64,000 bases of DNA, from positions 62,001-126,000 of the IMG/VR virus record IMGVR_UViG_3300028364_000014; one strand, written 5' to 3'. Below are positions 1 to 51,068 of the stretch, piece by piece. Made by a program: the position numbers and the translations under genes. The notes below the pieces were generated by a model. That model did not search any database. It was given only the letters and a program-made list of their open reading frames with translations, and was not told the origin of the DNA. Position 1 is the stretch's first letter, and each line of letters opens with the position of its first letter.

Positions 1-16
1 AGACAGTGCCAATACA

Positions 17-691
17 TTGCTGGCTTTCTTTAATACGGAAAGTTCAACAGGGATGAAGGATACTGTTAAAAAGTCAATTCAGCACATAGGACTTCCTATG
101 TACAAATTAGATTATGAAAGACTGCAACGTGTTATTGTATTGATTCGTGATACACACCGTATGCATCAAAACTTTAACCCTAATTGGTCTTTAACTAGAA
201 TTAAAGAAGAACATCAAATAACAATAAACGAGCAGTTTGCCTTAAGACACTCTAAAGAGAGGTTTAGTTGGTTAAACCTCATTACTCAGTACTTTGAGGC
301 TAATGGTAATAAAGCTGAACTCATGTGCTCAGCATATGATATAGCTATACTAGGTAAGGACCAAGGACATTACGTAGGTAATTATGCACGTTTCAGTAAA
401 GATGCTAACTACGTTGTATATAGAATTACTGACTGTGAGGGAACGATCTCTACATTAGGGATTAGGCACCCAGATGAAACAAATCACTTATGTGATCAAC
501 ACTACCTGAGATTTAATTATATAGTAGCTAATGAAGCTTGTTTATCCTTTGCAGCTAAAATTACCAGACAAGTAAAAAAGGAATTAGAGTTGATTGATAT
601 ATCCAAAAAACAGGAACCTTTAAAACCTATCACACAAGCTATCGATTTTCCTCAAATTGAAGCTGATGATCCAGAAGACACCCCATTCTAG
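17..691 (+). CDS. PcfJ-like phage protein (probably 5'-truncated by window edge) with acidic ...DDPEDTPF tail
   Basis: LMCSAYDIAILGKDQGHYVGNY...YVVYRI...TLGI...DQH resembles the PcfJ domain pattern (G..Q.HCV..Y). Confidence 0.45.
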   Translation: MLAFFNTESSTGMKDTVKKSIQHIGLPMYKLDYERLQRVIVLIRDTHRMHQNFNPNWSLTRIKEEHQITINEQFALRHSKERFSWLNLITQYFEANGNKAELMCSAYDIAILGKDQGHYVGNYARFSKDANYVVYRITDCEGTISTLGIRHPDETNHLCDQHYLRFNYIVANEACLSFAAKITRQVKKELELIDISKKQEPLKPITQAIDFPQIEADDPEDTPF

Positions 692-737
692 TCAATTATC
701 TGTTTGAGCAGGTACACAGGCCTTAAGCTCAAAGCGT

Positions 738-757
738 CGCCTCACTTCGGTGGGGCG
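738..757 (+). other. GC-rich hairpin with UUCG tetraloop
   Basis: cgcctcac-ttcg-gtggggcg, intergenic. Confidence 0.6.
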
Positions 758-814
758 GGTGGCAAAATGGACATTCCGTCCACAATTAAACCGTAATACA
801 TAGGAGATTACACC

Positions 815-1420
815 ATGACTAACATTATCAAAAAGAATGCTAAAGTACTTAACAATCGTGAACTTATAACTGGAATGGGCGCTAATGGTATTGTGCCCTC
901 TCTTAACAACAAAGGCACACTTATTTTTACTCATTGCCCTATGTGCGAAGCAGAGCTCCTTGCAGATAACCCTGGTTATACTAAAGCTATTCTTAGTAAT
1001 AAACCTTGGTATCAAGCTACGCCAGCTATTGTGTTCAAAATGCCTAATGGCTCTACTCTCAAGGCGTGCTGTTGTGGTTATAGAGAGCTAGTAATTATTA
1101 CACCTAAACCTAGGTGCTCTAACTGCGGTAGTGTTCTTAAGAACGAAGGGGACAGGTGCTATGGTCCTAACTGCCAGCCTCCTACACAACAGGAGCTGGA
1201 CTCCATTGCGACCGAGAAAAAGCAAGCTCAGGAGATAAAGGCTGCTGAATTGAAAGCCAAACAAGAGGCTAAGCAAAAAGCCACTAAACCTCCTGTCAAA
1301 CAGTGCGTAACTCCTGGATGTACAAACCCAGTGCCTGAGAGTCGTTTTGTTAGATGCGAGGCATGTCGTGCAACACGAAGAACCCCAAAGGAGGAGGCTT
1401 GTACTGAAGTTCAGATGTAA
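815..1420 (+). CDS. Cys-rich (zinc-binding) hypothetical protein
   Basis: RBS aggag; CPMC, CSNC, CVTPGC, CEAC motifs. Confidence 0.6.
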   Translation: MTNIIKKNAKVLNNRELITGMGANGIVPSLNNKGTLIFTHCPMCEAELLADNPGYTKAILSNKPWYQATPAIVFKMPNGSTLKACCCGYRELVIITPKPRCSNCGSVLKNEGDRCYGPNCQPPTQQELDSIATEKKQAQEIKAAELKAKQEAKQKATKPPVKQCVTPGCTNPVPESRFVRCEACRATRRTPKEEACTEVQM

Positions 1421-1597
1421 TCTGCTGGCTACCGAAGATGAACTCATCTATCTCATGATAGATGGACTAACCTATATCTACTGCCTTGATAAAGCTAAGC
1501 ATCCATACTTCATTAAAACATTGAAGTATAAACCAGGCAAAGCTATTAACTATATCAAAGCAGAAGCCTATTGGACAGAGATGGGTTAAATTAAACC

Positions 1598-1641
1598 TGG
1601 GCACCTGAGTAATTAAGGTGTCCAAATTAAGGAGAATTATC
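1598..1641 (+). promoter_or_regulatory. Repeated hairpin+RBS leader module, copy 1
   Basis: tgggcacct-gagtaatta-aggtgtcca then aattaaggagaattatc ATG(1642). Confidence 0.75.
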
Positions 1642-1980
1642 ATGCAAAAAGCACTAAAAACTGTTAAACGAGCTACCTATGCACAAAAACGACAAGAGGC
1701 TTTTGATATGTTGAACAACACATATGAGGAAGAAGGTGTTCTTCTGTGCAGTGGGGAATTTAAAATCAATTCTCTGATGGCTATGATGATGGCAAGATCT
1801 GCTTTTAAAGAGACTTATGGAGCACTCGCCCCAAGGTACTTCAACATACCGGCTGACGAGCTTCCAGGAACTGAAGTACACCCAGGTGTATATATTTCAC
1901 GAGATGAGAATTCTCATTATTCTTTGGAGTACGAAGACGGTTTCCAAATGGAGGAATTTATTCAACAATGGGTATGTTAA
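1642..1980 (+). CDS. hypothetical protein
   Basis: ORF; start moved to ATG after RBS aaggag. Confidence 0.7.
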   Translation: MQKALKTVKRATYAQKRQEAFDMLNNTYEEEGVLLCSGEFKINSLMAMMMARSAFKETYGALAPRYFNIPADELPGTEVHPGVYISRDENSHYSLEYEDGFQMEEFIQQWVC

Positions 1981-2024
1981 ATAAATAAACAAGGGGCTCT
2001 GTATGAGCCCCATAAGGAGGCAAT

Positions 2025-2216
2025 ATGGGTAATTTAGATAAAATAGGAATGTGTTCCCACTGTAAACAGCTTTGTACACCTGTTGAATTGGATGAAGATA
2101 AAACTGAAGAAGTGGATTTCTTTGGTGTGGATAGCCTGTCTGAAGTAGACCAGTATATACTGGAAGGTGGAATTTTGTGCGAAAAATGCTACTCAAAAGA
2201 AGGCGGCATAGTATAA
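2025..2216 (+). CDS. small zinc-ribbon protein
   Basis: RBS aaggagg; CSHC...CEKC. Confidence 0.65.
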   Translation: MGNLDKIGMCSHCKQLCTPVELDEDKTEEVDFFGVDSLSEVDQYILEGGILCEKCYSKEGGIV

Positions 2217-2225
2217 ACCAAACAC

Positions 2226-2268
2226 AGGTGTTTGAATAACTCAGACATCTAAACCAAGGAGAAGTGAT
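2226..2268 (+). promoter_or_regulatory. Repeated hairpin+RBS leader module, copy 2
   Basis: aggtgtttga-ataac-tcagacatct then aaaccaaggagaagtgat ATG(2269). Confidence 0.7.
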
Positions 2269-2541
2269 ATGACACAGCGTACAGCAATGAACAACGACAA
2301 ACGAACAGAAGAGGCTACCACTGATTATACACTCCAATTTGAATTAAGGAAATTAGGTTATCGTCGCAAAGATAAACAAGTATGTGAAGCATGTATCGAA
2401 GAAATGGAATACAGCATGCAGTCCGTTGGTTATACAGGTACCAACCCTGCTTGGGCTAACCCAAGATGTGCATATAGATTCGAAAAAGAAGGGTCTTCTA
2501 TGATAGCCTGTAGGTGTGGTTGGAGAAAAACCATAGTTTAA
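2269..2541 (+). CDS. Cys-containing hypothetical protein
   Basis: ORF with RBS; CEAC, CRC. Confidence 0.65.
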   Translation: MTQRTAMNNDKRTEEATTDYTLQFELRKLGYRRKDKQVCEACIEEMEYSMQSVGYTGTNPAWANPRCAYRFEKEGSSMIACRCGWRKTIV

Positions 2542-2570
2542 ATAACACTATTTAATAGTTCCATAACTAA

Positions 2571-2614
2571 TAGGTGCCTGAATAACCAGGGCACCTAAAT
2601 CAAGGAGAATTACC
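2571..2614 (+). promoter_or_regulatory. Repeated hairpin+RBS leader module, copy 3
   Basis: taggtgcctgaataaccagggcaccta then aatcaaggagaattacc ATG(2615). Confidence 0.75.
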
Positions 2615-3220
2615 ATGATAAACAATGCCACTTTTACCCCAAACACTCTTGAAATACTTCCTGAATTCTGTGAACTATCCACCTTAACCTCATCGTTATT
2701 TGGTGATAACAATAGCTTAAGCTTTCAAAGTATTAAACTTAGTGCTGCTATTACCGTAAAAAAAGAGTACTTGGATGATTACTCACTTTCACATGACTGT
2801 AAAGCGTCAATATTGCGACAAACCAGAGACAGGATATCTGTACCAATAATACATTCTAATTTTGACTATGCTCTCAGTCGTGCGAGAGAATTTGATGGTA
2901 AGCTGTATTGTGGTAGCACTAACACAGTACGTTGGCAAGTAGAGTGGATAGAGCTACTTAGTAATTCCACTGGTAATGTGTATAAATTAAAGAGAATTAA
3001 AGACGAGTTACTTTGGCGCATGATGCTTATACAAGTGAATGGTGTGTCTATAGAGGACTCAGGGTTATCCTCGGTTGATTTAGAGGCAGTTCGTATGGAG
3101 CTAATGGATATAATTTACGTAATGTGCTTTCGTTTAAAAGGACATAGAGATAAAGGTAAAGTCTGTCAATCAAGGAAGATGCTTGAAGCGCAGCTCGAAG
3201 ACTTAAATACAGAAGTATAA
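2615..3220 (+). CDS. hypothetical protein
   Basis: ORF with strong RBS. Confidence 0.7.
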   Translation: MINNATFTPNTLEILPEFCELSTLTSSLFGDNNSLSFQSIKLSAAITVKKEYLDDYSLSHDCKASILRQTRDRISVPIIHSNFDYALSRAREFDGKLYCGSTNTVRWQVEWIELLSNSTGNVYKLKRIKDELLWRMMLIQVNGVSIEDSGLSSVDLEAVRMELMDIIYVMCFRLKGHRDKGKVCQSRKMLEAQLEDLNTEV

Positions 3221-3228
3221 TTTAAATA

Positions 3229-3273
3229 TGGGTGCTTGGATAATCCAGGCACCTAAAATCAAGGAGAATTATC
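3229..3273 (+). promoter_or_regulatory. Repeated hairpin+RBS leader module, copy 4
   Basis: tgggtgcttgga-taa-tccaggcaccta then aaatcaaggagaattatc ATG(3274). Confidence 0.75.
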
Positions 3274-3867
3274 ATGGGAGCAGATAGAACTCACCACAAC
3301 GCACACATGAAGAATGAGAATGCAGTAGCTGGAGTACGAATGACTGTTTGGGTTGCAGTGTATGATTTTTACAACCAGATGGGAATAAATTGGGACAATA
3401 TTGATGACTTGGTAAGCCCTTATGAGTATGGTAACACTAGATTCTCAGAAGCTTATCTTCTTCCTTTTTATTTCAAAAACCACTTTAATACGCGTAAAGC
3501 CACACAGATGATAGGATATGCTGGAAGCAATAACAGTCCTCTGGAGTTTCGACTCAAAAGGATGAACCTGCTGAACTTCATTGAGTTAGCCAGAGCACTG
3601 ATGCAAGCCAACATGATTACAAAAAAAGATATTCAAATTATTTTGGAAGCACCTTTCAAAAAGCGTAAAACAACAGGGAGAGGTCCGGAAAGCGGGGGAG
3701 TTTATAAATTCTACGCCAAAACACTTGTTGTTTCTTCCATCAATAAATGGGGAGGATTAAAGAACGCAGCAAGGCAGCTCGAAGTATCCTTGGATGTTGT
3801 TAAGTATTGGAGTACTTTAGTTGTTAAAGATATTAAAGTGAAACCCACCTCATCAGCAAGGAGATAA
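3274..3867 (+). CDS. hypothetical protein with C-terminal helix-turn-helix
   Basis: GGLKNAARQLEVSLDVVKYW is HTH-like. Confidence 0.55.
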   Translation: MGADRTHHNAHMKNENAVAGVRMTVWVAVYDFYNQMGINWDNIDDLVSPYEYGNTRFSEAYLLPFYFKNHFNTRKATQMIGYAGSNNSPLEFRLKRMNLLNFIELARALMQANMITKKDIQIILEAPFKKRKTTGRGPESGGVYKFYAKTLVVSSINKWGGLKNAARQLEVSLDVVKYWSTLVVKDIKVKPTSSARR

Positions 3868-3885
3868 TCATACAGGAGGTACAAC

Positions 3886-4467
3886 ATGTTTATTAAATCT
3901 AAGTACAATGATGGTGTGTGGAACAAATTGGAAAATTGGGAAATGTCAGAAAACTGTGAAATAACAGGTATTGGACCTATGGGACTTGAGGTATACGGAA
4001 TGATAAAGGCAGTAGCCCCATTCGAAAAACTTGAGGCTGGACAGAAGATAGGTATTATGGACTATGGTTGGTGGATACTTGGAGAACCCAAATCATTATC
4101 TAAACAACAGTTGCACACCATCTATACTGCACACTATCGATATCCTGGGTCAGACAGGGTGGATATTACTGTCAAAGGACAGGACCCTAATTGGAAAGAA
4201 TTTGCACCCACTTGGAAGATGGTAATGGGAGTAAAAAATGGTACTATGAGTGAACAGGAGTATGTTGATTTGTATGCGCCTACTGGTAGACAAATCACAG
4301 TCATAGGTAGCGTGTCTGAGGCTACTTGGGAAAGACTGTATCAAATGGAAACAGCGACATTTGTTTGTTTTTGTCCTGAAGGTGCGTTTTGCCACCGAAA
4401 TATCCTACTAAACTACATCCTTGAAATAATGGGAGGCAAAGTAGTCTATGGGGGTTGGAGAAAATAA
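3886..4467 (+). CDS. DUF488-like protein
   Basis: DITVKG...FAPTW..V...Y...Y...FVCFC...FCHR pattern. Confidence 0.6.
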   Translation: MFIKSKYNDGVWNKLENWEMSENCEITGIGPMGLEVYGMIKAVAPFEKLEAGQKIGIMDYGWWILGEPKSLSKQQLHTIYTAHYRYPGSDRVDITVKGQDPNWKEFAPTWKMVMGVKNGTMSEQEYVDLYAPTGRQITVIGSVSEATWERLYQMETATFVCFCPEGAFCHRNILLNYILEIMGGKVVYGGWRK

Positions 4468-4620
4468 ATCGACATTTGTTATTATGATACTATTTTACGG
4501 TAACCGCTTATTTCGTGTTTTAAGTCAGTACAATAACTCGCCCAACTAATGAAACGCCAGAAAGTGCCTGTAAGCAATTTGGAGATGTTTGACGGTAAAT
4601 GCAATTTATACCTACACCTT

Positions 4621-4650
4621 GGGGGACTAGCTTTTAAAAGTTAGTTCCCC
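4621..4650 (+). terminator. intergenic hairpin, possible terminator
   Basis: gggggactagctt-ttaa-aagttagttcccc; weak U-tract. Confidence 0.4.
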
Positions 4651-4963
4651 TTAGTGTTCTCGGAAGAGTGCCACCCACTGGCGCTGGCGCGTGTTCTCGG
4701 TATACTGAAAAACAAGCACCACTTCCGGGACAGTCCTGGATTCGGTAGCCTTCCCTGCTTGAAATCTCATATAGTCTGGAAGTCACGAGTACTGCCTAAG
4801 TATTAATCGTTCTACTAAACCAAAGGATTAAATTATGAGCACTAAACAATGGGTGTGGATGATGGACTACTGCAAAAAACAAAGCATTCCACCCGCAGAA
4901 TCCTGGGCTTGGGGAGATGCCAAGAAAGCCTATGAACTTTCCCGCTTGAAATCCTCTATAGTA

Positions 4964-5022
4964 GGGAGGCCGGGAGTACTGGAGTACCAGGAGGTTCTCG
5001 GGAGACAGGAGTATGAGGGAGA
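4964..5022 (+). repeat. GGAG-repeat cluster containing ccaggaggttctcgggagac
   Basis: 7 GGAG in ~60 nt; core repeated at 7790 and 35132. Confidence 0.7.
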
Positions 5023-5153
5023 CATCAACCAATAACCCTTTAGTAAGGAGAGTAGCACTAACAGGTAAGTAAAGTTGAGTATTAAAAACAGGAGAGGGAG
5101 CCAGGAGGTTCCTTCAATGTAGCATCAATCTATTAAATATAGGGAGTTTTAAC

Positions 5154-5354
5154 ATGGCTAAAATTATTCGTTTTGTAAAAGTTGATGGGTACCAGACAAG
5201 AGCCGGTATTACACAGTCCAACATCTTTAAGAATTCTTGCGAAAAAGCTGCTAAGATTCTCGGACTGGATGTTGTAACCCTCAATACCAAAAGGCAAGCC
5301 TCAAAATTCAAAAGAGGCACCGGTATCGTATTCAACACAGCAATCAACAAGTAA
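5154..5354 (+). CDS. small basic hypothetical protein
   Basis: RBS gggag, ORF. Confidence 0.55.
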   Translation: MAKIIRFVKVDGYQTRAGITQSNIFKNSCEKAAKILGLDVVTLNTKRQASKFKRGTGIVFNTAINK

Positions 5355-5787
5355 TACCAACCAACCAAGGAGAAATACCCATGGCAAGAAATCGAAAGTA
5401 CGGAGCATCCCCAGCAGTCGTGCATTTTTTCAGAGAATGTAATACAGAAGTTGTAAAAATGATAGATGCCCGTGCATCAAAGCCAAAAGCCTGTGGTAAG
5501 GTTACAAGGATTAGCGATAATGTTATTAAACGGAGGAAGCTATATGTTTGAAACCCAAAAACTGATTGTTGATGAAAAGGGAGTATGTAGTCCCCCATAT
5601 AAAGTCATCCCATTAGAGAGGCTCTATCGACATATTCCAACGGCACGTAAGCTGTTGAGGCACAGGAGTATGATGCGGTTGAGTGCACCACCAGTAATAA
5701 AATCATTACCCCTATATATAGGGTAAAATTGATCACAAAGGGGGGCCGTAAGGTTCCCCACAACTAACCAAAGTAAGGAGATACACC

Positions 5788-7512
5788 ATGACAGAAGCAC
5801 AAACTCAAACCAATGAAGTACCGGCAGAAGAAGTTATTGAAGTTCATCAAACAGCAGATGAAGCAGCAGTAAAAGATTCATTTGGTAAAAATTTGACACT
5901 CACTGGTATGCAGACTCGTCAGACAGATACTGGTGATATTACCTTCTTCAATACTGATTATGTATCACCACGAGTACTTGATATCATCCAATGGTACTGC
6001 AATACTCAAGTTAGTGGATTCAATGGTCTCTATTCAGTCATTTTCAGAATGGATGGTCTTCCAAAAGTGGATGTACCTAGCGACACTCCAACATCCTGGA
6101 TGTTCTTCCCTGACACCCTTACTGCAGTATGTAATATCCGTGGGTGTATCGATGTAGCTCTATTTGAGGTAATGTCTGGAGATGTTAAAGAGGCTGCATG
6201 CATTAACACGTGGGCTGTCATTTGGCGCGCAATTGTGCAAAACTTCTTTCACGAAGCACACCATGCACAAACTTTCCTCAACGATAGAGAATTGCTCGAT
6301 TCCAAAGGGCAAAAAGGCTCCAAAGCCAGAGACGATGAAGAACAAGCGGCAATTGTATATGCTCAAACAATGATGATTGAAGCCGCTAAAGCATTAAACA
6401 TAGAACCTGAATTCACGCCTGAAGTAGCCGATATTATTCAGGATCGAATTGCGGATGAGATGGAAGCTATTGATGATGAATCACCCAGCCATCACAAACT
6501 ATGGGCGTCTAACATGAAGTATATGTTGAAACATGGATTCATCGTACATATCAAAACCGATGAAGGATATGAGGATAAAAGCTATTCCACGCTCAAAGAG
6601 TTTATGCATTCACAAAGTGGAGATGCTGAAAATGACCCAGCATGGCTAATCCAACATCCAGATACTACTTGTGTTGGTACAACTACTAACACAATAAACC
6701 CTATAGCAGACTCACCAGCTCCTGTAACCCAAACCGGTGGATTTATGTCTCCTCCTAATAACAACAATGGTTATGTCATTGAGGACGACGATTATAATGA
6801 TGATGATATTGATTATGGGCAAGCACAAAGTCCAACCAATACTATTCATGCTAACAACGCATACCAAACCCCTAACGCAAACGGTATGCAGGGAGCTGCA
6901 AATGTAGCAAACGGTTATGCTGGACCAAACACTACACCGCAAAATCCTGTAGCCGGTCCGCCTGCGCAGTTTAATCAGCCTGCTGTTGTTGGTGGGCAAT
7001 CCGCACAACCATTGAATTGGGACACTGGATACCACCAGGCAATAGTAAAAGGACTCTACCAGAAATTGGCTAATAACATCTTTGGTAAATGTCAGTTTAT
7101 AGTAGGACAAACAGCGAACACCCCATTCTTCATGAATGTTCCGGGTATTGAAGCACCACTACCCCTCAGCCCTGAAGAAGCACAACTGGTGATTGCCCAA
7201 ACCATTACCCAGAACGGTAAGTTCATGAAAGACCAACCTATGCAGAACAACGCTATCGGTGGTTGTACCATTGGTAAAGCAAAACTCATGCCTGGTTATG
7301 AATTGGTATTGAACAACGGACAAGGTGGTCAAATTCGTCGTAAATTCATTCCCCAAAATCCTTGGAAAACTTCCAAAACAGCAGAATGGGCACGTAACGG
7401 ACATCAGATTGTCTGGATTATTGACCCCGACGCCGCTGATAAATCTCTAAGTATGAGAGTAATGGGTGGTATAGTTGAAAGTAATCGAAGTGGACAGTGG
7501 GCAGCAGTCTAA
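5788..7512 (+). CDS. large hypothetical protein with HExxH motif and N/Q/P-rich linker
   Basis: RBS aaggag; FFHEAHHA followed by EEQAA. Confidence 0.6.
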   Translation: MTEAQTQTNEVPAEEVIEVHQTADEAAVKDSFGKNLTLTGMQTRQTDTGDITFFNTDYVSPRVLDIIQWYCNTQVSGFNGLYSVIFRMDGLPKVDVPSDTPTSWMFFPDTLTAVCNIRGCIDVALFEVMSGDVKEAACINTWAVIWRAIVQNFFHEAHHAQTFLNDRELLDSKGQKGSKARDDEEQAAIVYAQTMMIEAAKALNIEPEFTPEVADIIQDRIADEMEAIDDESPSHHKLWASNMKYMLKHGFIVHIKTDEGYEDKSYSTLKEFMHSQSGDAENDPAWLIQHPDTTCVGTTTNTINPIADSPAPVTQTGGFMSPPNNNNGYVIEDDDYNDDDIDYGQAQSPTNTIHANNAYQTPNANGMQGAANVANGYAGPNTTPQNPVAGPPAQFNQPAVVGGQSAQPLNWDTGYHQAIVKGLYQKLANNIFGKCQFIVGQTANTPFFMNVPGIEAPLPLSPEEAQLVIAQTITQNGKFMKDQPMQNNAIGGCTIGKAKLMPGYELVLNNGQGGQIRRKFIPQNPWKTSKTAEWARNGHQIVWIIDPDAADKSLSMRVMGGIVESNRSGQWAAV

Positions 7513-7949
7513 TGTTGCATCGAACCCTTGGTGGTATTGTGCTCGCAAAAAGTAAAGGGTGCAGTACCATCAGACTCGAAACGGGCGAGACCAGGAAAAT
7601 ATTAATTCCTTGTTTATCTCGTATTGGGGATAGAATTCATGTGTATATTAATTGGTCTACTAATAAAGTGACCAAAGTAAGCACTGTAGGATGCCCAGAC
7701 CATTGGAACGGTGATGTGGAGCCGAAACCAGTGGATATCCCCGATGAGACTGAAGATATTCCACATTTAGAGTGCCAGTCACTTGAGGACCAGGAGGTTC
7801 TCGGGAGACCGAGGAGTGAGGGAGTAGGGAGCTTGGAGTTTCCTATGCCCATAAGCGAAGACGATTCTATATTAGATGATGTCTTCGAGGAAGATTATTA
7901 TACCCAGGCTGGAGAACCCAGTCACAAATTATTTAAGGAGCTATTATGA
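7512..7949 (+). CDS. hypothetical protein with acidic C-terminus
   Basis: ATG overlaps upstream TAA; stop overlaps ssb start. Confidence 0.55.
   Translation: MLHRTLGGIVLAKSKGCSTIRLETGETRKILIPCLSRIGDRIHVYINWSTNKVTKVSTVGCPDHWNGDVEPKPVDIPDETEDIPHLECQSLEDQEVLGRPRSEGVGSLEFPMPISEDDSILDDVFEEDYYTQAGEPSHKLFKELL
7790..7839 (+). repeat. GGAG-repeat cluster, second copy
   Basis: ccaggaggttctcgggagac identical to 4987-5006, followed by further GGAGs. Confidence 0.7.
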
Positions 7950-8860
7950 ACCGTTTATCCGTAGTTGGACGTATCGCTGGCATGCCCGTTTATACACCTT
8001 CAGTTGTTGTTAATGGCAAAACTATCAACGCCAAAACTGAACTCACAATCATTGAAAACGACGGTGAGAAGAAAAACTCATTCCGTATTACTGGTTGGGG
8101 CAAACAAGCAGAAAACTTGGCAAAGGGCGGAGCTGTTGGTAAAGCGATCACAATCTTTGGGCGTCTCTCTACATATAAGGGACGTGTATGGCTGGACATG
8201 GGTAATGGTAATCGTCAGCCTGTTCAAAGTCCTCAGGGTGGAGATTTGCTAATTACCAAAACAGGTATTACTCTTGAAAGACTGGATTGGGGAGCAGATT
8301 CAGGTAAAACAATTGCTCAGGAAATTCAGGACTTCCAGAATAGCGGTGGCTCAATGGGTCGTCCGCCAATGTGGCAAATTCCTGGGTCTCCTGATAACCA
8401 GACCTGGAAAAACATTTGTGCTGAGCGTAAAGCAACTGAATTTCAACCTGGAAGTACTCATTTTGGATATGCTGAAGTGCGTATTCCTAATGGTGCTCAG
8501 GTTGCTCCTCCTACACAAAGTGGTAATCAGTATGCAAATAATGGCGGTCATCAGGGTGGATTTCAAGCAGGGCAGCCGAATAATAACGGCGCTGCTCAGT
8601 ATGGTAATCCTCCTCAGCAACCAGCAACTCAGCAGGGCGGATTTCAGGGTGCAGCAAACAATCAACAAGTTCAGTATGGCGGACAGAATATGGGTCAGGC
8701 TATGTCAGGTTATACTGGTACTGGTCAGATGGCAGGTAATCCTGGGCAGGTTCAAGGTGGTTTTCAGGGGGCGCAGCAAGGTAATCCCCCAAACCAGGGT
8801 TATGCTCCTCAGACACAAGGGTACGCACCAAATCAGCAGGCAACTAACGTTCAGATGTAA
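7946..8860 (+). CDS. ssb: single-stranded DNA-binding protein with Q/G/N-rich tail
   Basis: MNRLSVVGRI...ITGWGKQAENLAK...GKAITIFGRL OB-fold signature. Confidence 0.8.
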   Translation: MNRLSVVGRIAGMPVYTPSVVVNGKTINAKTELTIIENDGEKKNSFRITGWGKQAENLAKGGAVGKAITIFGRLSTYKGRVWLDMGNGNRQPVQSPQGGDLLITKTGITLERLDWGADSGKTIAQEIQDFQNSGGSMGRPPMWQIPGSPDNQTWKNICAERKATEFQPGSTHFGYAEVRIPNGAQVAPPTQSGNQYANNGGHQGGFQAGQPNNNGAAQYGNPPQQPATQQGGFQGAANNQQVQYGGQNMGQAMSGYTGTGQMAGNPGQVQGGFQGAQQGNPPNQGYAPQTQGYAPNQQATNVQM

Positions 8861-8875
8861 TTAACCTTTAACTTA

Positions 8876-8919
8876 CCGGTAGGTCAGCTCAATAATGGGT
8901 TGGCTTACCGGGTTTTTTT
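8876..8919 (+). terminator. Rho-independent terminator
   Basis: ccggtaggtcagctca-ataa-tgggttggcttaccgg followed by T-run, directly after ssb. Confidence 0.85.
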
Positions 8920-9505
8920 CTACTTCCTATTAATGGAGGGTACAGAATTTGTTTACATCAATACCGACTTTTTTTGCTTTTAGTTTATTGTTTAATTATT
9001 ACTCTTGTATCTTATGTAGTACCGACTTTATTTGCTCTTCTTGATCCTGGTTCCCTGGAGTAAGGGGAAAATGATGATTAAGAACGGAACATCTATTTAT
9101 ACCCGCAAATATAAATATACAATAATAAATAATACTAGTAGACTAGATACTAACTAGTACTATATAGTTTAGTACTTAATCTATTGGTATTAAAGTACAC
9201 TAGTATCTATTATATGAGTATCCCTACTAGGACTAAAAAACATAAGATGTATAAAAGAATAAAAATGATTATTTATTGGGTACTGCTAGTTTTGATACTA
9301 GTAAAGTATACTATGAGAATTAAGTATTAATTATATAAAAAGTAAAGGAGTTATCATGGATTTTGAAGAAGCAGTAGAGCAACTAGTAGATGAGTATGGA
9401 TGTCCTGAAAATCAAGCAGAAGATATTAAAGAATTTTTAATTGGCGCAGGAAATATGTATGGTATTGTTGAACTATACGAAGCCAGTCAAAAGGAGAATA
9501 AGTAA

Positions 9506-9787
9506 ATGAAAAATTATGAAGGTTTTATTAAAGTATGGCATCCAGGTAAAGAATTACCTATTAAATTTGAAGGGATGGTCAATCTAATAGTTGATCCAGC
9601 GTGCGACGACGACACCCTAACATTTGAATTTAGAGCTAATATACCTGATGCAAAAGTAACTATAGTATCCGTTCCTACCTATAAATTTATGGTACAATAC
9701 TATGAGGATAACGAACTCAGCGGCGAAGATGATATTATTGATTGTGATCCAGACGACTGGTCTGATGTTCTAGACCTAAAAGCATAA
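9506..9787 (+). CDS. acidic hypothetical protein
   Basis: RBS aaggag, ORF. Confidence 0.65.
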   Translation: MKNYEGFIKVWHPGKELPIKFEGMVNLIVDPACDDDTLTFEFRANIPDAKVTIVSVPTYKFMVQYYEDNELSGEDDIIDCDPDDWSDVLDLKA

Positions 9788-10158
9788 TTTTTAAGTCTTT
9801 ATAATTAGATGAGACTATAAATATAATCTAATATACTTCTGGTTTAAACACCTAAGTATACGTGTTCTTTCATAGAGAACTCTCCTGAATAATAGGGATT
9901 AGTGCTTATAGGTTAAGTACTAGTCCCTATTTCTCCTTTTTAATTTTCCCCTGTTCCTTGTTTATTAATCCAATTAGTAAGAAATCCATCCAGTATAAAT
10001 ACTATGGTATCTGTTTTATTAAGTCCTTTCTCTTTCATATACATCTCCAATAAGGACTTGGTTATATTGTTTATTCTAAATGTTACACTACCTACCGATT
10101 TTTTTTCACTCATAATGTTGCTCCTATTATTACTACTATTATTAAATTACACCGTAAC

Positions 10159-19463: not shown

Positions 19464-20609
19464 ATGGCTGAACATAGATTAGTAACAATTGAAAAAATAA
19501 CTAAAGTTACTGAACATCCAAACGCGGACAAACTTGATATTGTAGATATACAAGGATGGCAATGTGTCACACAAAAAGGAGTATATAAAAAAAATGAAAT
19601 TGTAATATATTTTCATATTGATTCTATATTACCAGTAGACATCGAAAAAAGAATATTTGGTCCCGACGCAAAAATAACATTAAATAAACATAGAATACGT
19701 GCTATAAAAATACGCAGTATGCTTTCTTATGGACTAGTAGTACCGATAAGTCTTTTTAGTGATTTAATTAAAGATGAAAAAGTCAATGATGATGTTACAA
19801 ATATCTTTAAAGTTACAAAATACGAACCTATAATAAATAAAAAGAACATTTTATATGTAAATAGACAGAAAAAAAGATATGAAAATCCAAACTTTAAAAA
19901 AGTAAGAAAACCAGAAAGACTTTCAAACTATAAAGGGTGTTTTGATGGCAAAGAAGTAATGATAACTGAAAAAATCCATGGAACATCATGTAAAGTAGGC
20001 TGGGTTCTAAGACCTAACAATACTTGGAAAGAAAAACTTATTGTTAAACTTTTTGGTAATTATCAATTTGTATATAGAACTATGAAAGTACAATTACAAA
20101 AACATGACACGATCATGGATAAAATTTTAACTAAAATAGGAATAAGAAAATATAAAGGGTATTATAAAGATATAAATCATGGTAATGTTTATGCAAAAAT
20201 GGTTAATCAATATGAATTAAAAGAAATTATTTCATCTGGTTATGAAATAGCGTTTGAAATATATGGGAGTAGAATTCAAAAAAATTATACTTATGGATTA
20301 AAGCATAATGAACATAAAATGGTAGTATATGCAGTAATAAAAGATGGTAAATATTTACCTCCACATGATGCGTATGCTTTCTGTGAAATTCATAAATTAC
20401 CACATGTTCCTATATTATATATAGGCATATTCTCTAATGACGAACTGAATAGATGTACAGTTGGAGTAAGTGTATTAGATCCAAATACAAAAGTAAGAGA
20501 AGGATGTTGTATTGTACCACTAGACGGAAAACCATTATGGATGGGAAAAGAAGTAATGAAATCAATCAATCCATACTATGAACTTAAAAATCAAACAGAA
20601 TATAATTAA
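19464..20609 (+). CDS. RNA ligase, Rnl2/DRB0094 family with N-terminal OB domain
   Basis: HPNADKLD N-terminus, motif I TEKIHGTS, FEIYG..IQKNY, REG, KSINP. Confidence 0.85.
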   Translation: MAEHRLVTIEKITKVTEHPNADKLDIVDIQGWQCVTQKGVYKKNEIVIYFHIDSILPVDIEKRIFGPDAKITLNKHRIRAIKIRSMLSYGLVVPISLFSDLIKDEKVNDDVTNIFKVTKYEPIINKKNILYVNRQKKRYENPNFKKVRKPERLSNYKGCFDGKEVMITEKIHGTSCKVGWVLRPNNTWKEKLIVKLFGNYQFVYRTMKVQLQKHDTIMDKILTKIGIRKYKGYYKDINHGNVYAKMVNQYELKEIISSGYEIAFEIYGSRIQKNYTYGLKHNEHKMVVYAVIKDGKYLPPHDAYAFCEIHKLPHVPILYIGIFSNDELNRCTVGVSVLDPNTKVREGCCIVPLDGKPLWMGKEVMKSINPYYELKNQTEYN

Positions 20610-28010: not shown

Positions 28011-29501
28011 ATGATTTACATTATAGACGCAAGGAACAAGATAGGTCACCCGACCAAGAAACATGATATGATAGGTCGATTGATCCGAAACGAGAAAGCA
28101 AAGATTATTAAGAGATTGAACAAGGATGTTATGATCGTTCAATTATTAACAAAGGTTTTTTCTAAAAGTGAAACAATTGATTGTGAATTTAGGATAGGTA
28201 TTGATCCTGGATATGCAAATATTGGATTTGCTGTGTTTAAAATACATGGCAACATTATCACTAAACTTATTAATGGAGAGGCATATTTACGAACAAAAAA
28301 AATCAAAGAAGGGCTTGATGCTAAGAGAATGTATCGCCGTAATCGAAGATATATAGCTCGAAAGAATATTAAAAAGAAACATGGAATAGGTCAAGCCAAA
28401 TTCAAACATCCTGTTTGGAAAAATCGAAACAAACATAAGTTTCAACCTACTCATCTTCATTTAATTCAATCGCATGAAAATGTGCTGGCAAAATTGTTGA
28501 AACTAATTCCAATCGAACAAGTTAAAATTCATTTGGAATATAATAACTTTGATTTTCATAAAATGATTAATCCTAAGATACAATCTTTTTGGTATCAAAA
28601 AGGGTTACAGTTTGGTTTTGAGAATATAAAAAGTTATGTGAGGAATCGAGACAACTATCAATGTCAAATTTGCAAAAAGGATGTTGGTAATATCAGGAAT
28701 GAAGTTCACCATATCAAATGGAAAAGTAATGGTGGATCAGATCGACCTGAAAATTTAATATTGTTGTGTGAAGGCTGCCACAACAAGGTCCATAAAAAAG
28801 GATTGAGTTGTCCAGATAGATCTATTTCAGTAAATGGATACCGTAATGCTGGAGTTTTAAATTCAGTTATGGAAACAATATGGAGTAAGTTTGAAGATCA
28901 ATGTCCAGTTCAAGACACCTATGGTTATATCACAAGTGGTGTTCGGAACCGAGACAACATTATTAAATCTCACGACAATGACGCAAGCGTTATTGCCTTC
29001 AACGATAGCTTGGGAAGTCAAAACTTTGAGGATTGTTCTTGGAAGGATTATAGCTCTAAATTAAATATGAATCAGTTCCCCAAGCATACCCGATCATTCA
29101 CATTAAGACATACTGACCGTAGATATGTAATTTTAAATTCTAAATTGCCTGAAAAGAAGAGAACTATAGTGGCTTGGAATCGCAAACGAAGGGCGGGCCA
29201 AGATCCTAAGAAGCAAAGCCTTGCCGAGTTGAAGCAATCTCTTATGATTGATGGAAGATTGAATTCAACGGTTATTGTTGTAATCCCAGGGCAGAAGGTA
29301 ATGAGAAGTTTGATCACTGATTACAAAATTCGAAAAGGTGATGTTGTCAATGTGGAATCAACAATACGAGTCTGTAAAGGTGTGCAAAACAAAGGTACGG
29401 TTGTTACTTTTGAAAATGATTTAAACCCAAAGAAATTAGATACATTTGGAACTAAAAAATGTCATAAAATGATAAACAATTGTGGATTGGTGACTTATTA
29501 A
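28011..29501 (+). CDS. iscB: IscB RNA-guided endonuclease (RuvC + HNH)
   Basis: IGIDPG (RuvC-I), RMYRRNRR bridge helix, HLE (RuvC-II), RDNYQCQIC..HHI..GGSDRPENLILLC..CH (HNH), SHDNDA (RuvC-III). Confidence 0.92.
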   Translation: MIYIIDARNKIGHPTKKHDMIGRLIRNEKAKIIKRLNKDVMIVQLLTKVFSKSETIDCEFRIGIDPGYANIGFAVFKIHGNIITKLINGEAYLRTKKIKEGLDAKRMYRRNRRYIARKNIKKKHGIGQAKFKHPVWKNRNKHKFQPTHLHLIQSHENVLAKLLKLIPIEQVKIHLEYNNFDFHKMINPKIQSFWYQKGLQFGFENIKSYVRNRDNYQCQICKKDVGNIRNEVHHIKWKSNGGSDRPENLILLCEGCHNKVHKKGLSCPDRSISVNGYRNAGVLNSVMETIWSKFEDQCPVQDTYGYITSGVRNRDNIIKSHDNDASVIAFNDSLGSQNFEDCSWKDYSSKLNMNQFPKHTRSFTLRHTDRRYVILNSKLPEKKRTIVAWNRKRRAGQDPKKQSLAELKQSLMIDGRLNSTVIVVIPGQKVMRSLITDYKIRKGDVVNVESTIRVCKGVQNKGTVVTFENDLNPKKLDTFGTKKCHKMINNCGLVTY

Positions 29502-33893: not shown

Positions 33894-34109
33894 ATGATAA
33901 GAATAGGAGCTTGGCTTACTAATAGAACTATAAATAAATCAACAAGTAAACCTATACTTACTTATAAATGCTCATTTTGTGGTAATGAGGATATTGCAAT
34001 GACAAATACAAAATTTTGTGGCAAATGTTATGAATTAGTTCCAAACATAGACCTATTATTTGAAGATGGGGATATGAGAGTACTTTATCATATTTACGGA
34101 GAATATTAA
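33894..34109 (+). CDS. zinc-ribbon protein (tandem set 1 of 4)
   Basis: CSFC...CGKC. Confidence 0.65.
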   Translation: MIRIGAWLTNRTINKSTSKPILTYKCSFCGNEDIAMTNTKFCGKCYELVPNIDLLFEDGDMRVLYHIYGEY

Positions 34110-34304
34110 ATGATAGTATTTATGAAACCAGTCAATTTTCTTCTTACACAAGTAATTTGTCCAGATTGTGGGCAAGTAGTCACTTTAACTGTGGCAAAAG
34201 AAGTAACATGTAAATGTTGCAATGCGTTAATGTATCCTGAAATGGCTTATATGTCCCACAGAATATTTTTTCGACAACAATACTATAATGAAAAAAGTAC
34301 TTAA
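34110..34304 (+). CDS. zinc-ribbon protein (2 of 4)
   Basis: CPDC...CKCC. Confidence 0.65.
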   Translation: MIVFMKPVNFLLTQVICPDCGQVVTLTVAKEVTCKCCNALMYPEMAYMSHRIFFRQQYYNEKST

Positions 34305-34356
34305 TTAAAAATATAATTTATACACGTATACCTCCATAGGAGCAAAGAATTAAACT

Positions 34357-34620
34357 ATGCTAATGTTTAAAAGAGATATTTATGGTAATAATTCAAATTC
34401 TAAAATACTAAATAACATACCATGGGAATTTATGTGTCCTGGTTGTGGTAAAATTGTATACATAATGGAAGAAATTCCTTACGAGTCTTGTTGGAGATGT
34501 GGTACTGTACTTACTATCGGAACTAAAATTATAGATACTAAGACTTCACTAGCACGTATTAATTACTACAGTACTGGATGGTCATTAAATGATAGACAGA
34601 TTAACGAGATGGTATCATGA
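34357..34620 (+). CDS. zinc-ribbon protein (3 of 4)
   Basis: CPGC...CWRC. Confidence 0.65.
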   Translation: MLMFKRDIYGNNSNSKILNNIPWEFMCPGCGKIVYIMEEIPYESCWRCGTVLTIGTKIIDTKTSLARINYYSTGWSLNDRQINEMVS

Positions 34621-34880
34621 TTACAGTACTAAAAAATAACAACAGGCAATATATAACTTGCTCATGTGGAATAAAAAATCAAATAGTGTCTTCTATTTAT
34701 GGAAGATGTCCAAGTTGTAGGGTCGATTTAAAATTCTCTAATTCTTTTATTCAAAAAAGAAGTTGTAGAACTGGAGTAATGGCGTATTACAAATTTGGAT
34801 TTTATGATTATGACAGTGTAGATCAAAATAAAGCAACAAAGTTGATTTACAATAAATTACTTAAAAATAACTTGTTATAG
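34617..34880 (+). CDS. zinc-ribbon protein (4 of 4)
   Basis: CSC...CPSC. Confidence 0.6.
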   Translation: MITVLKNNNRQYITCSCGIKNQIVSSIYGRCPSCRVDLKFSNSFIQKRSCRTGVMAYYKFGFYDYDSVDQNKATKLIYNKLLKNNLL

Positions 34881-35131
34881 TTTATATTCAGTGCTGACTT
34901 AATTATAACAAGAAATTTAGAATAAAGAGGTTGGTATCCCAAACTGACCTCAAATGGTGATATAATGAGACAAATAAGAATAACTATAAATGACGGTACA
35001 TGTATGTTGTCACTAACAAAATTTGTAGTGGATTTAGCTTCCTGTATTGAAAGTGCTTTTACAGAAGAGAATCAATTAAATAAAAGAACAACAAGAAATA
35101 CACAAAATATAAAATTAGAATTTAAAGATGG

Positions 35132-35148
35132 GGAGGTTCTCGGGAGAC
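35132..35148 (+). repeat. third copy of ggaggttctcgggagac
   Basis: 17-nt exact match to copies at ~4990 and ~7793. Confidence 0.7.
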
Positions 35149-35204
35149 TGGGGTGGGAAGGAGTTTAGAAATATAAATCTTAAAATATAAAAGAGAGTAC
35201 GAGT

Positions 35205-35588: not shown

Positions 35589-35715
35589 GTTAATGCGGCA
35601 CTTTGGTATAGAGGGTTACATATACCCTTTCTAATCTACTTGTCTATAAAGACCTACTTGGGAAGATTATAAAAGTTAGATTAATATAAACTTGTTCTTA
35701 AAAGGAGAACCGAAA

Positions 35716-51033: not shown

Positions 51034-51068
51034 AATCAGTAAATGCTATTAAAGGGAGATCAATATCC

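What the first reader, a model, noticed from the sequence alone, without database searches (positions are those of the whole stretch)
4939..5112. Dense GGAG arrays with a dispersed 17-20 nt core (ggaggttctcgggagac)
Seen: 7 GGAG at ~8-10 nt spacing in 4964-5022, 3 more at 5090-5108, 6 in 7790-7839, and the exact core again at 35132, 27 kb away in very AT-rich DNA. All three cores lie in ORFs reading EVLGR with identical codons, favouring a nucleic-acid signal. GTTCTCGG also occurs at 4656 and 4693. Established: repeated GGA motifs are how CsrB/RsmZ RNAs titrate CsrA/RsmA, and GGAG is the Shine-Dalgarno core. Inference: CsrA sponge, ribosome decoy, or binding site for a phage protein.
Basis: partly seen in the sequence, partly recalled or inferred. 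Interest (0 to 1): 0.62.

Follow-up and report, generated by a model that had tools for sequence, protein, structure and literature searches.

The report
Conserved jumbo-phage GTTCTCGG regulatory motif
The GGAG-rich repeats are real, and they surround a roughly 27-base signal that one group of uncultured giant phages keeps on the gene strand just upstream of a few early genes such as the single-strand DNA-binding protein gene; it is most likely a phage-specific transcription signal and not a CsrA or ribosome sponge.

Summary
The 17-mer GGAGGTTCTCGGGAGAC occurs exactly three times in the 238-kb phage genome, always on the + strand. The two GGAG arrays are the only such clusters in the genome.

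The 17-mer is the local form of a wider motif: GTTCTCGG, 2-3 nt, AC(A/C/T)G, 5 nt, TGAG, flanked by purine-rich, C-poor tracts.

- **Distribution.** Related jumbo phages (31-42% protein identity in neighbouring genes) carry 4-5 copies per 20-kb early region. All are on the gene strand and none on the other strand.
- **Position.** Copies sit 69-160 nt upstream of the next start codon where the downstream gene is called, and always before the SSB gene.
- **Not a peptide.** The motif is read in all three frames, is sometimes intergenic, and once supplies the stop codon.
- **Nucleotide constraint.** In orthologues of the 150-aa ORF, synonymous change is suppressed across the repeat (22/23 against 29/65 codon columns, p=1e-5).
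- **No shared RNA fold, and no Rfam match.**
- **Arrays are accessory.** They are not conserved in AT-rich relatives, and GGA is not presented in loops.

The phage encodes two two-barrel RNA-polymerase-like proteins.

Best reading: a clade-specific promoter-like signal (confidence about 0.4). The main rival is a linear RNA-level protein-binding or processing site (about 0.3). The CsrA sponge or ribosome decoy reading is poorly supported.

The parts
4621..4650 (+). Conserved 13-bp hairpin immediately upstream of box A, in the long non-coding leader after the DUF488-like gene (3886-4467)
   Evidence: Flagged as terminator-like. The stem is kept with compensatory changes in L013 and L021.
4656..4663 (+). 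Box A: GTTCTCGG without the downstream ACNG/TGAG half
   Evidence: Same position in L021; ACCTCGG in L013.
4693..4716 (+). Box B: GTTCTCGG-tat-ACTG-aaaaa-CAAG, a weak version of the full motif
   Evidence: It is the first box of a 'two-box unit' that is contiguous in L013 and L021 (64-74 nt between boxes). In the window the two boxes are separated by about 300 nt.
4750..4794 (+). Direct repeat D1, copy 1 (76% identical to 4937-4981). It aligns with the place where L013 and L021 carry the GGAG array and core.
4835..5035 (+). 66-aa ORF whose 3' third overlaps D1 copy 2, GGAG array 1 and core 1. No homologue in relatives, so probably lineage-specific or spurious.
   Evidence: No Pfam or PHROG hit. 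No tblastn hit in L115, L117, L119, L013 or L021.
4965..5021 (+). GGAG array 1: 7 GGAG at 7-11 nt spacing, in all three codon phases
4990..5021 (+). Motif copy 1: core 17-mer (4990-5006), then ACAG, 5 nt, TGAGGGAG. It lies 160 nt upstream of the ATG at 5154.
   Evidence: Top hit of an HMM trained only on relatives (E=0.03).
5091..5111 (+). Third small GGAG cluster with a partial core copy (CCAGGAGGTTC, 5101-5111). It is not constrained.
   Evidence: A strain SNP G>A at 5105 destroys one GGAG.
5154..5354 (+). 66-aa ORF downstream of copy 1. Homologue present in L119.
7512..7949 (+). ORF of about 145-150 aa carrying copy 2. It has an N-terminal five-stranded beta-barrel (weak OB/IF1-like matches) and a low-confidence, probably disordered acidic tail that holds the repeat.
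7793..7824 (+). Motif copy 2: core 17-mer (7793-7809), then ACCG, 5 nt, TGAGGGAG. It lies 149 nt upstream of the SSB start. GGAG array 2 spans 7793-7838.
   Evidence: The nucleotides are invariant in 9 instances across 5 orthologues.
7824..7846 (+). 10-bp RNA hairpin (GUAGGGAGCU / UGG / AGUUUCCUAU) just after copy 2, inside the coding region
   Evidence: 97.5% of cells are paired in 4 orthologues, 2 pairs show compensatory double changes, and slid controls give 40-65%. Its several G-U pairs fit only the + strand RNA.
7946..8860 (+). SSB-like gene (OB domain plus Q/G-rich tail). The gene downstream of the motif in all four lineages.
34965..35168 (+). 67-aa ORFan whose last 12 codons carry copy 3
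   Evidence: Only a near-identical relative was found.
35132..35163 (+). Motif copy 3: core 17-mer, then ACTG, 5 nt, GGAA (variant second half), in AT-rich DNA. It lies 69 nt upstream of the GGACT-like gene (35205-35588), which precedes the Ro60 gene.

Best explanation
The 17-mer and its GGAG surroundings are the local form of a clade-specific, strand-specific cis-acting signal about 27-30 nt long: (GGAG[T]) GTTCTCGG, 2-3 purines, AC(A/C/T)G, 5 nt, TGAG(G), set in purine-rich, C-poor tracts.

I think it most likely works at the DNA level as a promoter for a small class of early/middle (replication-type) genes. Transcription would start in or just after the motif. That would give purine-rich 5' leaders, here followed by a stabilising hairpin, ahead of the SSB gene, the 557-574-aa gene, the gene after the DUF488 leader, and (in this phage) the GGACT/Ro60 pair.

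Where the upstream ORF runs long, the signal sits in its 3' end, in a disordered tail that tolerates it. The EVLGR peptide and the QE(S/Y) 9-nt repeats are by-products of that overlap.

What is shown: the motif, its strand bias, its position, its conservation across diverged phages, its frame independence, and the suppression of synonymous change. What is inferred: that it is a promoter, and which polymerase reads it.
For: Motif and strand bias:
- The composite motif is found 2(+1 variant)/4/4/5 times on the gene strand in the own genome, L115, L117 and L119, and 0 times on the other strand.
- GTTCTCGG occurs 5-6 times per 20-kb locus, where about 0.3 is expected, and its complement never.
- An HMM built only from the distant relatives ranks window copies 1 and 2 first and second in the 238-kb genome.

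Position:
- In the 12 cases tabulated, the motif lies 69-160 nt before the next start codon.
- It is intergenic in L117 (15145, 10556) and L119 (3774), and inside ORF 3' ends elsewhere. All three codon phases occur, and two different phases occur within one ORF.
- It precedes the SSB gene in all four lineages and the 557-574-aa gene in three, even though those proteins are only 31-42% identical.

Nucleotide constraint:
- 22 of 23 conserved-residue degenerate codon columns are identical inside the repeat, against 29 of 65 outside (Fisher p=1.2e-5).

Structure and spacing:
- No common RNA fold was found over ten two-box units.
- The first spacer varies by 1 nt while the second is fixed, as in two-part DNA sites.
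- No sigma-70-like promoter accompanies the sites.

Polymerases and precedent:
- The phage encodes a 1178-aa protein with both RNAP double-psi barrels, and a 3325-aa-or-longer ORF with a beta'-type barrel.
- Thermus phage P23-45 has virion and non-virion two-barrel RNAPs, each with its own short conserved promoter motif (bioRxiv 10.1101/2022.12.01.518664).
Against: - There are no transcript data: no RNA run holds this phage.
- Only three full copies exist in 238 kb, and none lies in the divergent region where rightward transcription must begin in this phage. It cannot therefore be the general early promoter.
- The motif has no AT-rich melting element.
- Boxes often come in pairs 54-78 nt apart, with a partly conserved purine-rich array between them. 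That is unusual for promoters.
- In L115 and L119 the leader boxes lie 300-480 nt from the next called gene.
- The RNAP assignments rest on weak hits (E about 1e-4 to 1e-6).
- The hairpin with G-U pairs after copy 2, and the box's wobble complementarity to GGAG units, fit an RNA-level role equally well.
Confidence: 0.4

Rival explanations
1. The motif is an RNA-level linear signal. In this reading, a phage or host RNA-binding protein or endoribonuclease recognises it in single-stranded, purine-rich stretches of the early polycistronic transcripts. It would act as a processing site, a stability or translation operator, or a boxA/nut-like site that modifies the elongating polymerase.
For: - The motif is strictly on the sense strand.
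- Its flanks are C-poor and purine-rich, so weakly structured.
- A + strand hairpin with G-U pairs and compensatory changes follows copy 2.
- The box pairs with GGAG units only through G-U wobble, that is, only as + strand RNA.
- Early transcripts of this clade are evidently processed: pistol or hammerhead ribozymes sit between early genes in all four lineages.
- A few copies per genome and a pyrimidine-rich 8-mer recall boxA of nut sites (my own knowledge).
- P23-45 has a 26-nt sequence-type terminator motif for its virion RNAP.
Against: - No conserved secondary structure accompanies the motif.
- There is no Rfam match.
- Several copies lie 21-152 nt before the stop codon of the ORF that hosts them. 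Cleavage or termination there would truncate that message.
- At 69-160 nt from the next start codon, the motif is too far away for direct occlusion of the ribosome-binding site.
- No RegB-like nuclease was found in the phage.
Confidence: 0.3
2. The arrays act as a CsrA/RsmA sponge or ribosome (anti-SD) decoy: the GGA/GGAG repeats titrate host CsrA or 30S subunits.
For: - GGA/GGAG density is very high and unique in the genome: 13 GGA in 4900-5160, and 7 GGAG within 60 nt.
- CAGGAG units resemble the A(N)GGA core of CsrA sites (my own knowledge).
- The leader arrays in L117 and L119 are also GGAG-rich.
Against: - The invariant nucleotides are not GGA.
- Orthologous sites in L117 (13125, 15145) and L115 (10737) have only A-rich purine tracts with 0-2 GGA.
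- Only 6 of 47 GGA motifs lie in predicted hairpin loops, and in four of five regions tested they are no more unpaired than their surroundings.
- There is no shared fold.
- Two of the three copies lie in translated ORFs.
- A strain SNP removes a GGAG in the 5091-5107 cluster.
- The phage has no CsrA, and the host is unknown.
Confidence: 0.07
3. The sites form a replication-origin or R-loop priming element. Tandem motif copies would fire purine-rich transcripts that form stable RNA:DNA hybrids next to an AT-rich stretch, as at the T7 primary origin or T4 oriF/oriG.
For: - The sites lie 5-8 kb from the gene-strand switch and the cumulative GC-skew minimum.
- They lie next to the SSB gene.
- In L115, L117 and L119 the SSB-proximal copy is followed by a hairpin and a 30-50-nt AT-rich run.
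- Purine-rich RNA favours hybrid stability (my own knowledge).
Against: - The sites are several kb from the skew minimum, and the skew here may simply follow gene orientation.
- Copy 3 lies 30 kb away, before unrelated genes.
- In the window the AT-rich run is replaced by coding sequence.
- No initiator gene was identified.
Confidence: 0.07
4. The repeats are a relic of duplication or recombination, or a conserved peptide (EVLGR), with no nucleic-acid function.
For: - The window shows a local 187-nt duplication (D1).
- Orthologues carry expandable 9-nt repeats between two cores.
- In this phage all three copies share one frame.
Against: - The motif is conserved across lineages that share only 31-42% protein identity.
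- Synonymous sites are frozen.
- All three frames and intergenic copies occur.
- The strand bias is absolute.
Confidence: 0.03

Closest known systems
[quoted passage not shown]
   Same: A short (about 20-30 nt) motif is conserved within a phage clade. It lies strictly on the gene strand, up to about 160 nt upstream of genes, may overlap the 3' end of the preceding ORF, and sometimes occurs in tandem. The phage encodes its own non-canonical RNAP-like proteins. GGGAGAC after GTTCTC recalls the GGGAGA initial transcribed sequence of T7-group promoters (my own knowledge; possibly coincidence).
   Different: No transcription start has been mapped. There are very few copies per genome. The first spacer varies by 1 nt. 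The motif sits in purine-rich tracts and has no AT-rich melting region. No T7-like RNAP is present. There is no sequence similarity to any published promoter that I could check.
Lambda-type nut sites (boxA plus boxB) and other RNA elements that modify elongating polymerase
   Same: A few copies per genome, on the sense strand only, with a linear pyrimidine-rich 8-mer followed within about 20 nt by further conserved bases and often a hairpin. They are located between early genes.
   Different: No conserved boxB-like hairpin. No N-like or Q-like protein was identified. Some copies lie inside ORFs.
CsrB/RsmY/RsmZ CsrA-titrating sRNAs
   Same: Dense repeats containing GGA, and CAGGAG-like units.
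   Different: GGA is not presented in hairpin loops. The arrays are not conserved among relatives, whereas a non-GGA box is. Two of the three copies lie inside ORFs, and no independent transcript has been shown.
PeSL-type regulatory cassettes of T4-like phages (promoter plus stem-loop units flanking variable ORFs; my own knowledge)
   Same: Short regulatory repeats at gene boundaries in the early region. Gene content differs between relatives on either side of them. The window shows a duplication or insertion between two boxes.
   Different: PeSLs are sigma-70 early promoters with terminator hairpins and occur in dozens of copies. This motif is neither.

Membership tests
CsrB/RsmZ-type CsrA sponge RNA | Many GGA motifs in one RNA | tested here: met
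   13 GGA in window 4900-5160, 8 in 7740-7900, 11 in each of the L119 and L117 leaders.
CsrB/RsmZ-type CsrA sponge RNA | GGA motifs presented in the loops of short hairpins | tested here: not met
   6 of 47 GGA lie fully in MFE hairpin loops. Mean unpaired probability of GGA is close to that of other bases in four of five regions.
CsrB/RsmZ-type CsrA sponge RNA | The GGA repeats are the conserved feature among relatives | tested here: not met
   The invariant part is GTTCTCGG..ACNG..TGAG. Orthologous sites in L117 and L115 have 0-2 GGA.
CsrB/RsmZ-type CsrA sponge RNA | A CsrA partner is present | tested here: inconclusive
   No CsrA (PF02599) in the phage record. The host is unknown.
Shine-Dalgarno site / ribosome decoy | GGAG complementary to the anti-SD, with a start codon 5-9 nt downstream (true RBS), or shown 30S binding (decoy) | tested here: inconclusive
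   The GGAG core is present many times. An NTG stands before 'AG' of the TGAG box in most copies, but the resulting ORFs are 3-25 codons long and not conserved (read by eye). 30S binding cannot be tested here.
Phage-specific promoter | Conserved motif on the gene strand only, shortly upstream of genes, kept at orthologous positions | tested here: met
Phage-specific promoter | A phage-encoded polymerase or specificity factor that could read it | tested here: inconclusive
   Two two-barrel RNAP-like ORFs, supported only by weak hits. A weak sigma region-2 hit (E=0.015). No T7-like RNAP (the control was silent, so this is not informative).
Phage-specific promoter | Primary transcript 5' ends map to the motif | not testable with these tools
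   No RNA run holds the phage.
Lambda nut-like antitermination site | Linear boxA followed by a conserved boxB hairpin | tested here: not met
   No common hairpin over ten units. Hairpins after the SSB-proximal copies differ in sequence and distance.
Any Rfam family (including self-cleaving ribozymes and Y RNA) | Covariance-model match at the element | tested here: not met
   Nothing at the gathering score, and nothing meaningful at E<=10 in window 4400-5200, L013 or L021.
T4 RegB GGAG cleavage system | RegB endoribonuclease gene in the phage | tested here: not met
   No PF10715 match at E<=1.
Conserved peptide motif (EVLGR) | Same reading frame and residues wherever the sequence occurs | tested here: not met
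   Codon phases 0, 1 and 2 all occur; some copies are intergenic; the TGA of the motif serves as the stop codon in L119 and L115.

The most novel reading that the evidence does not exclude
The 'two-box unit' (GTTCTCGG box, then a 45-60-nt purine-rich GGAG/GAGUUAG array, then a second box) could be a new kind of RNA device in the early transcripts of a jumbo-phage clade that also uses pistol and hammerhead ribozymes between early genes. One possibility is a sequence-defined processing or polymerase-modifying signal. In that case its pyrimidine box would pair in sliding registers with SD-like GGAG units, gating ribosome or regulator access to downstream replication genes.
Probability: 0.2. Interest if true: 0.7.

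Novelty: new member of a known kind. Interest (0 to 1): 0.45.

Why it matters
Uncultured jumbo phages with non-canonical two-barrel RNA polymerases have almost no known regulatory signals. This work gives a well-defined, strand-specific motif that survives about 60-70% protein divergence and marks SSB and neighbouring early genes. That is a concrete handle for three things: assigning promoters (or RNA signals) to these polymerases, splitting the genome into temporal classes, and designing in-vitro transcription or binding assays.

It is also a clean example of a regulatory signal written through a coding region, with measurable suppression of synonymous change. It warns against reading dense GGA/GGAG repeats as CsrA sponges from composition alone.

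Tried and rejected
- **Similarity to known phages.** Megablast of window 4000-9000 against GenBank phages found no match.
- **tRNA or tmRNA.** None found.
- **Rfam at the element.** No match.
- **Host mimicry.** The 17-mer gives 41 scattered single hits in 596 Gb of prokaryote genomes. That is at or below chance, so I rejected host mimicry.
- **Metagenome scan with the 17-mer.** Of 59 loci, only the phage's own lineage plus L013 and L021 are related. The rest are chance hits in GC-rich contigs.
- **Viral-contig scans.** Scans with two leader or composite patterns found only the phage's own lineage plus chance hits.
- **The search for related loci with single proteins.** These returned only the near-identical contig.
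- **Homologues of the copy-3 ORF.** Only a 99%-identical strain was found, so conservation of copy 3 could not be tested.
- **Whole records of the relatives.** L115, L117 and L119 are not held, so genome-wide motif counts there were impossible.
- **RNA evidence.** No RNA runs were found. Laying DNA contigs of four salt-lake runs on 5,201 letters showed about 0.5% strain divergence, no change inside either array or core, and one SNP in the 5091-5107 cluster. That is too few differences to be informative.
- **Common RNA fold.** None was found over ten two-box units. Consensus folding of the three close leaders supports only the hairpin upstream of box A.
- **Sigma-70 promoter and intrinsic terminator scans.** Nothing is associated with the motif.
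- **Candidate trans-acting genes in the phage.** No CsrA, RegB or T7-type RNAP gene.
- **Readings considered and dropped.** A DGR variable repeat (no search for a reverse transcriptase was run; the copies share only 17-40 nt), a CRISPR-like mini-array (wrong spacing; the 'spacers' are conserved), TRAP-type GAG repeats (wrong spacing), integron attC or invertase sites (direct orientation; no fit to the core sites), and a new self-cleaving ribozyme (no covarying stems).
- **Side job.** The structure of the 150-aa ORF was predicted. The weak OB/IF1-like matches (E about 7e-3) do not bear on the motif's mechanism.

Full report
**Setting**

The window is bases 62001-126000 of a 237,910-bp IMG/VR virus record, an uncultured jumbo phage estimated 87% complete. 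It occurs in lake and salt-lake metagenomes.

Genes switch from the - strand to the + strand, and the cumulative GC skew reaches its minimum, at about genome 58-60 kb. That is right at the start of the window. The first ~10 kb of the window form a GC-richer island, about 40% against about 31% elsewhere. The island holds small ORFans, a DUF488-like gene, a 574-aa ORF and an SSB-like gene.

**Observation**

- The 17-mer GGAGGTTCTCGGGAGAC is at 4990, 7793 and 35132 on the + strand, and nowhere else in the genome on either strand, even with 2 mismatches.
- GGAG clusters of 5 or more per 60 nt exist only at 4942-5049 and 7769-7863.
- Dinucleotide shuffles of the island never reach 7 per 60 nt and reach 6 once in 500.
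- GGAG falls in all three codon phases.
- GTTCTCGG also stands at 4656 and 4693. These five are the only copies in 238 kb, and the complement never occurs.

**Nucleic acid, not peptide**

The 150-aa ORF that holds copy 2 has orthologues at 57-70% identity. These carry two cores separated by (CAGGAGTNC)n 9-nt repeats. In all 9 instances the 17 nucleotides are identical, while flanking codons vary freely.

Counting codon columns whose residue is conserved and degenerate, 22 of 23 are nucleotide-identical inside the repeat region, against 29 of 65 outside (Fisher p=1.2e-5).

The region lies in a tail that AlphaFold models with low confidence and no secondary structure, behind a small beta-barrel domain. 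Protein constraint there is therefore weak.

More distant relatives were reached through homologues of the DUF488-like protein. They keep the gene order DUF488, long leader, small genes, 536-563-aa gene, small ORF, SSB, at only 31-42% protein identity. In them the same signal is read in codon phases 0, 1 and 2, and in two different phases within one ORF. It lies outside any ORF in L117 (15145, 10556) and L119 (3774). In L119 14074 and L115 12850 it provides the stop codon. In L021 the element has no start codon upstream in the EVLGR frame. The peptide reading is refuted.

**What is conserved**

Aligning 31 instances on GTTCTCGG gives this pattern: purine-rich (often GGAG[T]), GTTCTCGG, 2-3 purines, AC(A/C/T)G, 5 nt, (T)GAG(G). 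C is almost absent for about 12 nt after ACNG.
- The composite pattern occurs 2, 4, 4 and 5 times on the gene strand of the own genome, L115, L117 and L119, and never on the other strand. Copy 3 is a variant that this pattern does not match.
- An HMM trained only on the L115, L117 and L119 instances ranks window copies 1 and 2 first and second in the whole genome. Box A follows, with copy 3 and box B further down the list.
- The window's 17-mer is therefore the local dialect of an older motif.
- The GGAG arrays are not part of the invariant core. In AT-rich L117 the orthologous sites before the 536-aa gene and before SSB have A-rich purine tracts with 1-2 GGA.
- A strain SNP also destroys a GGAG in the 5091-5107 cluster.

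**Position**

In the 12 cases tabulated, the motif lies 69-160 nt before the next start codon. It precedes SSB in all four lineages and the 536-574-aa gene's orthologue in three. It marks the long non-coding leader after the DUF488 gene in all lineages. In L119 it also stands in the divergent intergenic region, before the first rightward gene. In this phage a third copy precedes the GGACT-like gene and the Ro60 gene.

Boxes often come in pairs 54-78 nt apart, with a purine-rich array between them. In the distant relatives that array shares a GAGTTAG(A/G)G centre, read by eye from the alignment.

In the window the leader pair (box B at 4693, core at 4994) is split by about 300 nt. That stretch includes a 45-nt duplication (D1) and the 5' part of a lineage-specific 66-aa ORF.

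**Structure**

- Rfam finds nothing at the element.
- Ten two-box units fold differently from one another. The box pairs with whichever GGAG unit is nearby, always through G-U wobbles.
- Two local hairpins are supported. One lies upstream of box A (4621-4650). The other lies just after copy 2 (7824-7846): 97.5% of cells are paired in four orthologues, two pairs show compensatory double changes, and slid controls give 40-65%. Its G-U pairs fit only the + strand RNA.
- GGA motifs are not preferentially in loops (6 of 47). In four of the five regions tested they are no more unpaired than other bases.

**Candidate readers**

- The phage has no CsrA, RegB or T7-type RNAP.
- It does encode a 1178-aa protein with weak matches to both catalytic barrels of multisubunit RNAP (Rpb2_6 and Rpb1_2, PHROG RNAP beta, PhiKZ gp71).
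- This pairing resembles the virion plus non-virion two-barrel RNAPs of Thermus phage P23-45. Those use their own short promoter motifs, and even a 26-nt sequence-type terminator (bioRxiv 10.1101/2022.12.01.518664).
- For the crAss-like phage phi14:2, no common motif was found upstream of early transcripts made by its virion RNAP (bioRxiv 10.1101/2020.03.07.982082). Such signals are still poorly known.

**Interpretation**

The sequence evidence points to a cis-acting signal read in one orientation. The points that fit a promoter are these:
- It lies upstream of genes.
- It tolerates sitting inside the 3' end of the preceding ORF.
- No RNA fold travels with it.
- Its first spacer varies by 1 nt.
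- One copy stands in a divergent intergenic region.
- The phage has its own polymerases.
- No sigma-70-type promoters lie nearby.

I therefore favour a promoter for a small class of early/middle genes (confidence about 0.4). A terminator or cleavage site is less likely, because several copies lie 21-152 nt before the stop codon of the ORF that hosts them.

An RNA-level linear signal remains a serious rival (about 0.3), whether a protein-binding site, a processing site or a nut-like site. Four things support it: the purine-rich unstructured context, the + strand hairpin, the wobble complementarity between the box and GGAG units, and the ribozyme-rich early transcripts of this clade (pistol in the window, L115 and L119; hammerhead II in L117).

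The CsrA sponge or ribosome decoy reading keeps only a small probability (about 0.07). An origin or R-loop role is speculative (about 0.07).

**Limits**

- No transcript data exist for this phage.
- Strain variation is too low to test constraint.
- Copy 3 has no diverged orthologue.
- The full genomes of the relatives are not held.
- The motif family appears confined to a rarely sampled clade. IMG/VR, as held here, has only this lineage.
- The RNAP assignments are weak.

**Verdict**

The feature is real, non-random and evolutionarily conserved. The feature is best filed as a new, clade-specific phage transcription (or RNA) signal whose mechanism needs 5'-end mapping.

Noticed in passing
window 698-764 (+); L115 4516-4583; L119 4135-4191 and 4650-4717; L117 6870-6937: There is a pistol ribozyme between two early ORFs (49 bits, above the gathering score). 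Relatives carry pistol ribozymes, or in L117 a type II hammerhead, at equivalent early intergenic positions. The early polycistronic RNAs of this clade therefore appear to be self-cleaved between cistrons.
   Followed up: partly
window 35205-35588 and 35692-37338 (+): The phage encodes a Ro60 orthologue (TROVE plus Ro60 vWA domains, E 1e-37 to 1e-50) directly after a GGACT/AIG2-like gamma-glutamyl cyclotransferase gene. Rfam found no Y RNA or YrlA in the window at the gathering score. Motif copy 3 sits just upstream of this pair.
   Followed up: partly
window 51000-54536 (+); genome 1 to ~10 kb (- strand, outside the window; L123): A 1178-aa ORF gives weak hits to both RNAP catalytic barrels (Rpb2_6 and Rpb1_2), which suggests a single-chain two-barrel RNAP. 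A second ORF of at least 3325 aa, with a beta'-type barrel, lies at the left end of the contig and may be a virion RNAP.
   Followed up: partly
window 57461-59962 (+): A ResIII/DEAD-type helicase is interrupted by an intein with a LAGLIDADG domain (Intein_splicing and LAGLIDADG_3 hits between the helicase motifs).
   Followed up: no
window 1-10000 and genome 58-60 kb: The island has 40% GC, against about 31% for the rest of the genome. It starts at the point where gene orientation flips and the cumulative GC skew is lowest. This may be the early region or a replication origin neighbourhood.
   Followed up: partly
window 33894-34880 (+): Four consecutive small ORFs (64-87 aa) each carry paired CxxC motifs. 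They look like a tandem family of zinc-ribbon-like proteins just upstream of the copy-3 ORF.
   Followed up: no
window 7512-7949 (+): The ORF before SSB has a five-stranded beta-barrel N-domain (pLDDT about 85-89) with weak Foldseek matches to IF1, aIF1A and eIF5A OB or SH3-like barrels (E about 7e-3). Its tail is acidic and modelled with low confidence. Orthologues vary from 88 to 173 aa, mainly through expansion of the QE(S/Y) repeat.
   Followed up: partly
window 4468-4834 (+); L115 9367-9932; L117 10351-10630; L119 10348-11027: A long (279-679 nt) non-coding leader follows the DUF488-like gene in every lineage. It contains the two-box unit. In the window lineage it also holds a covarying hairpin (4621-4650) and a GCACCCACTGG segment between boxes A and B. 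It could encode a small RNA.
   Followed up: partly
window 19464-20609, 28011-29501, 59997-61193 (+): Other RNA or nucleic-acid enzymes are present: an RNA ligase with an OB domain, an RRXRR-HNH endonuclease, and a phiEco32-like COOH-NH2 ligase.
   Followed up: no
L008, L009, L011, L012 against window 7793: Orthologues hold two cores flanking 60-78 nt of 9-nt repeats, whereas the window has a single core. That fits a deletion, or an expansion in the others, by recombination between the direct cores.
   Followed up: partly
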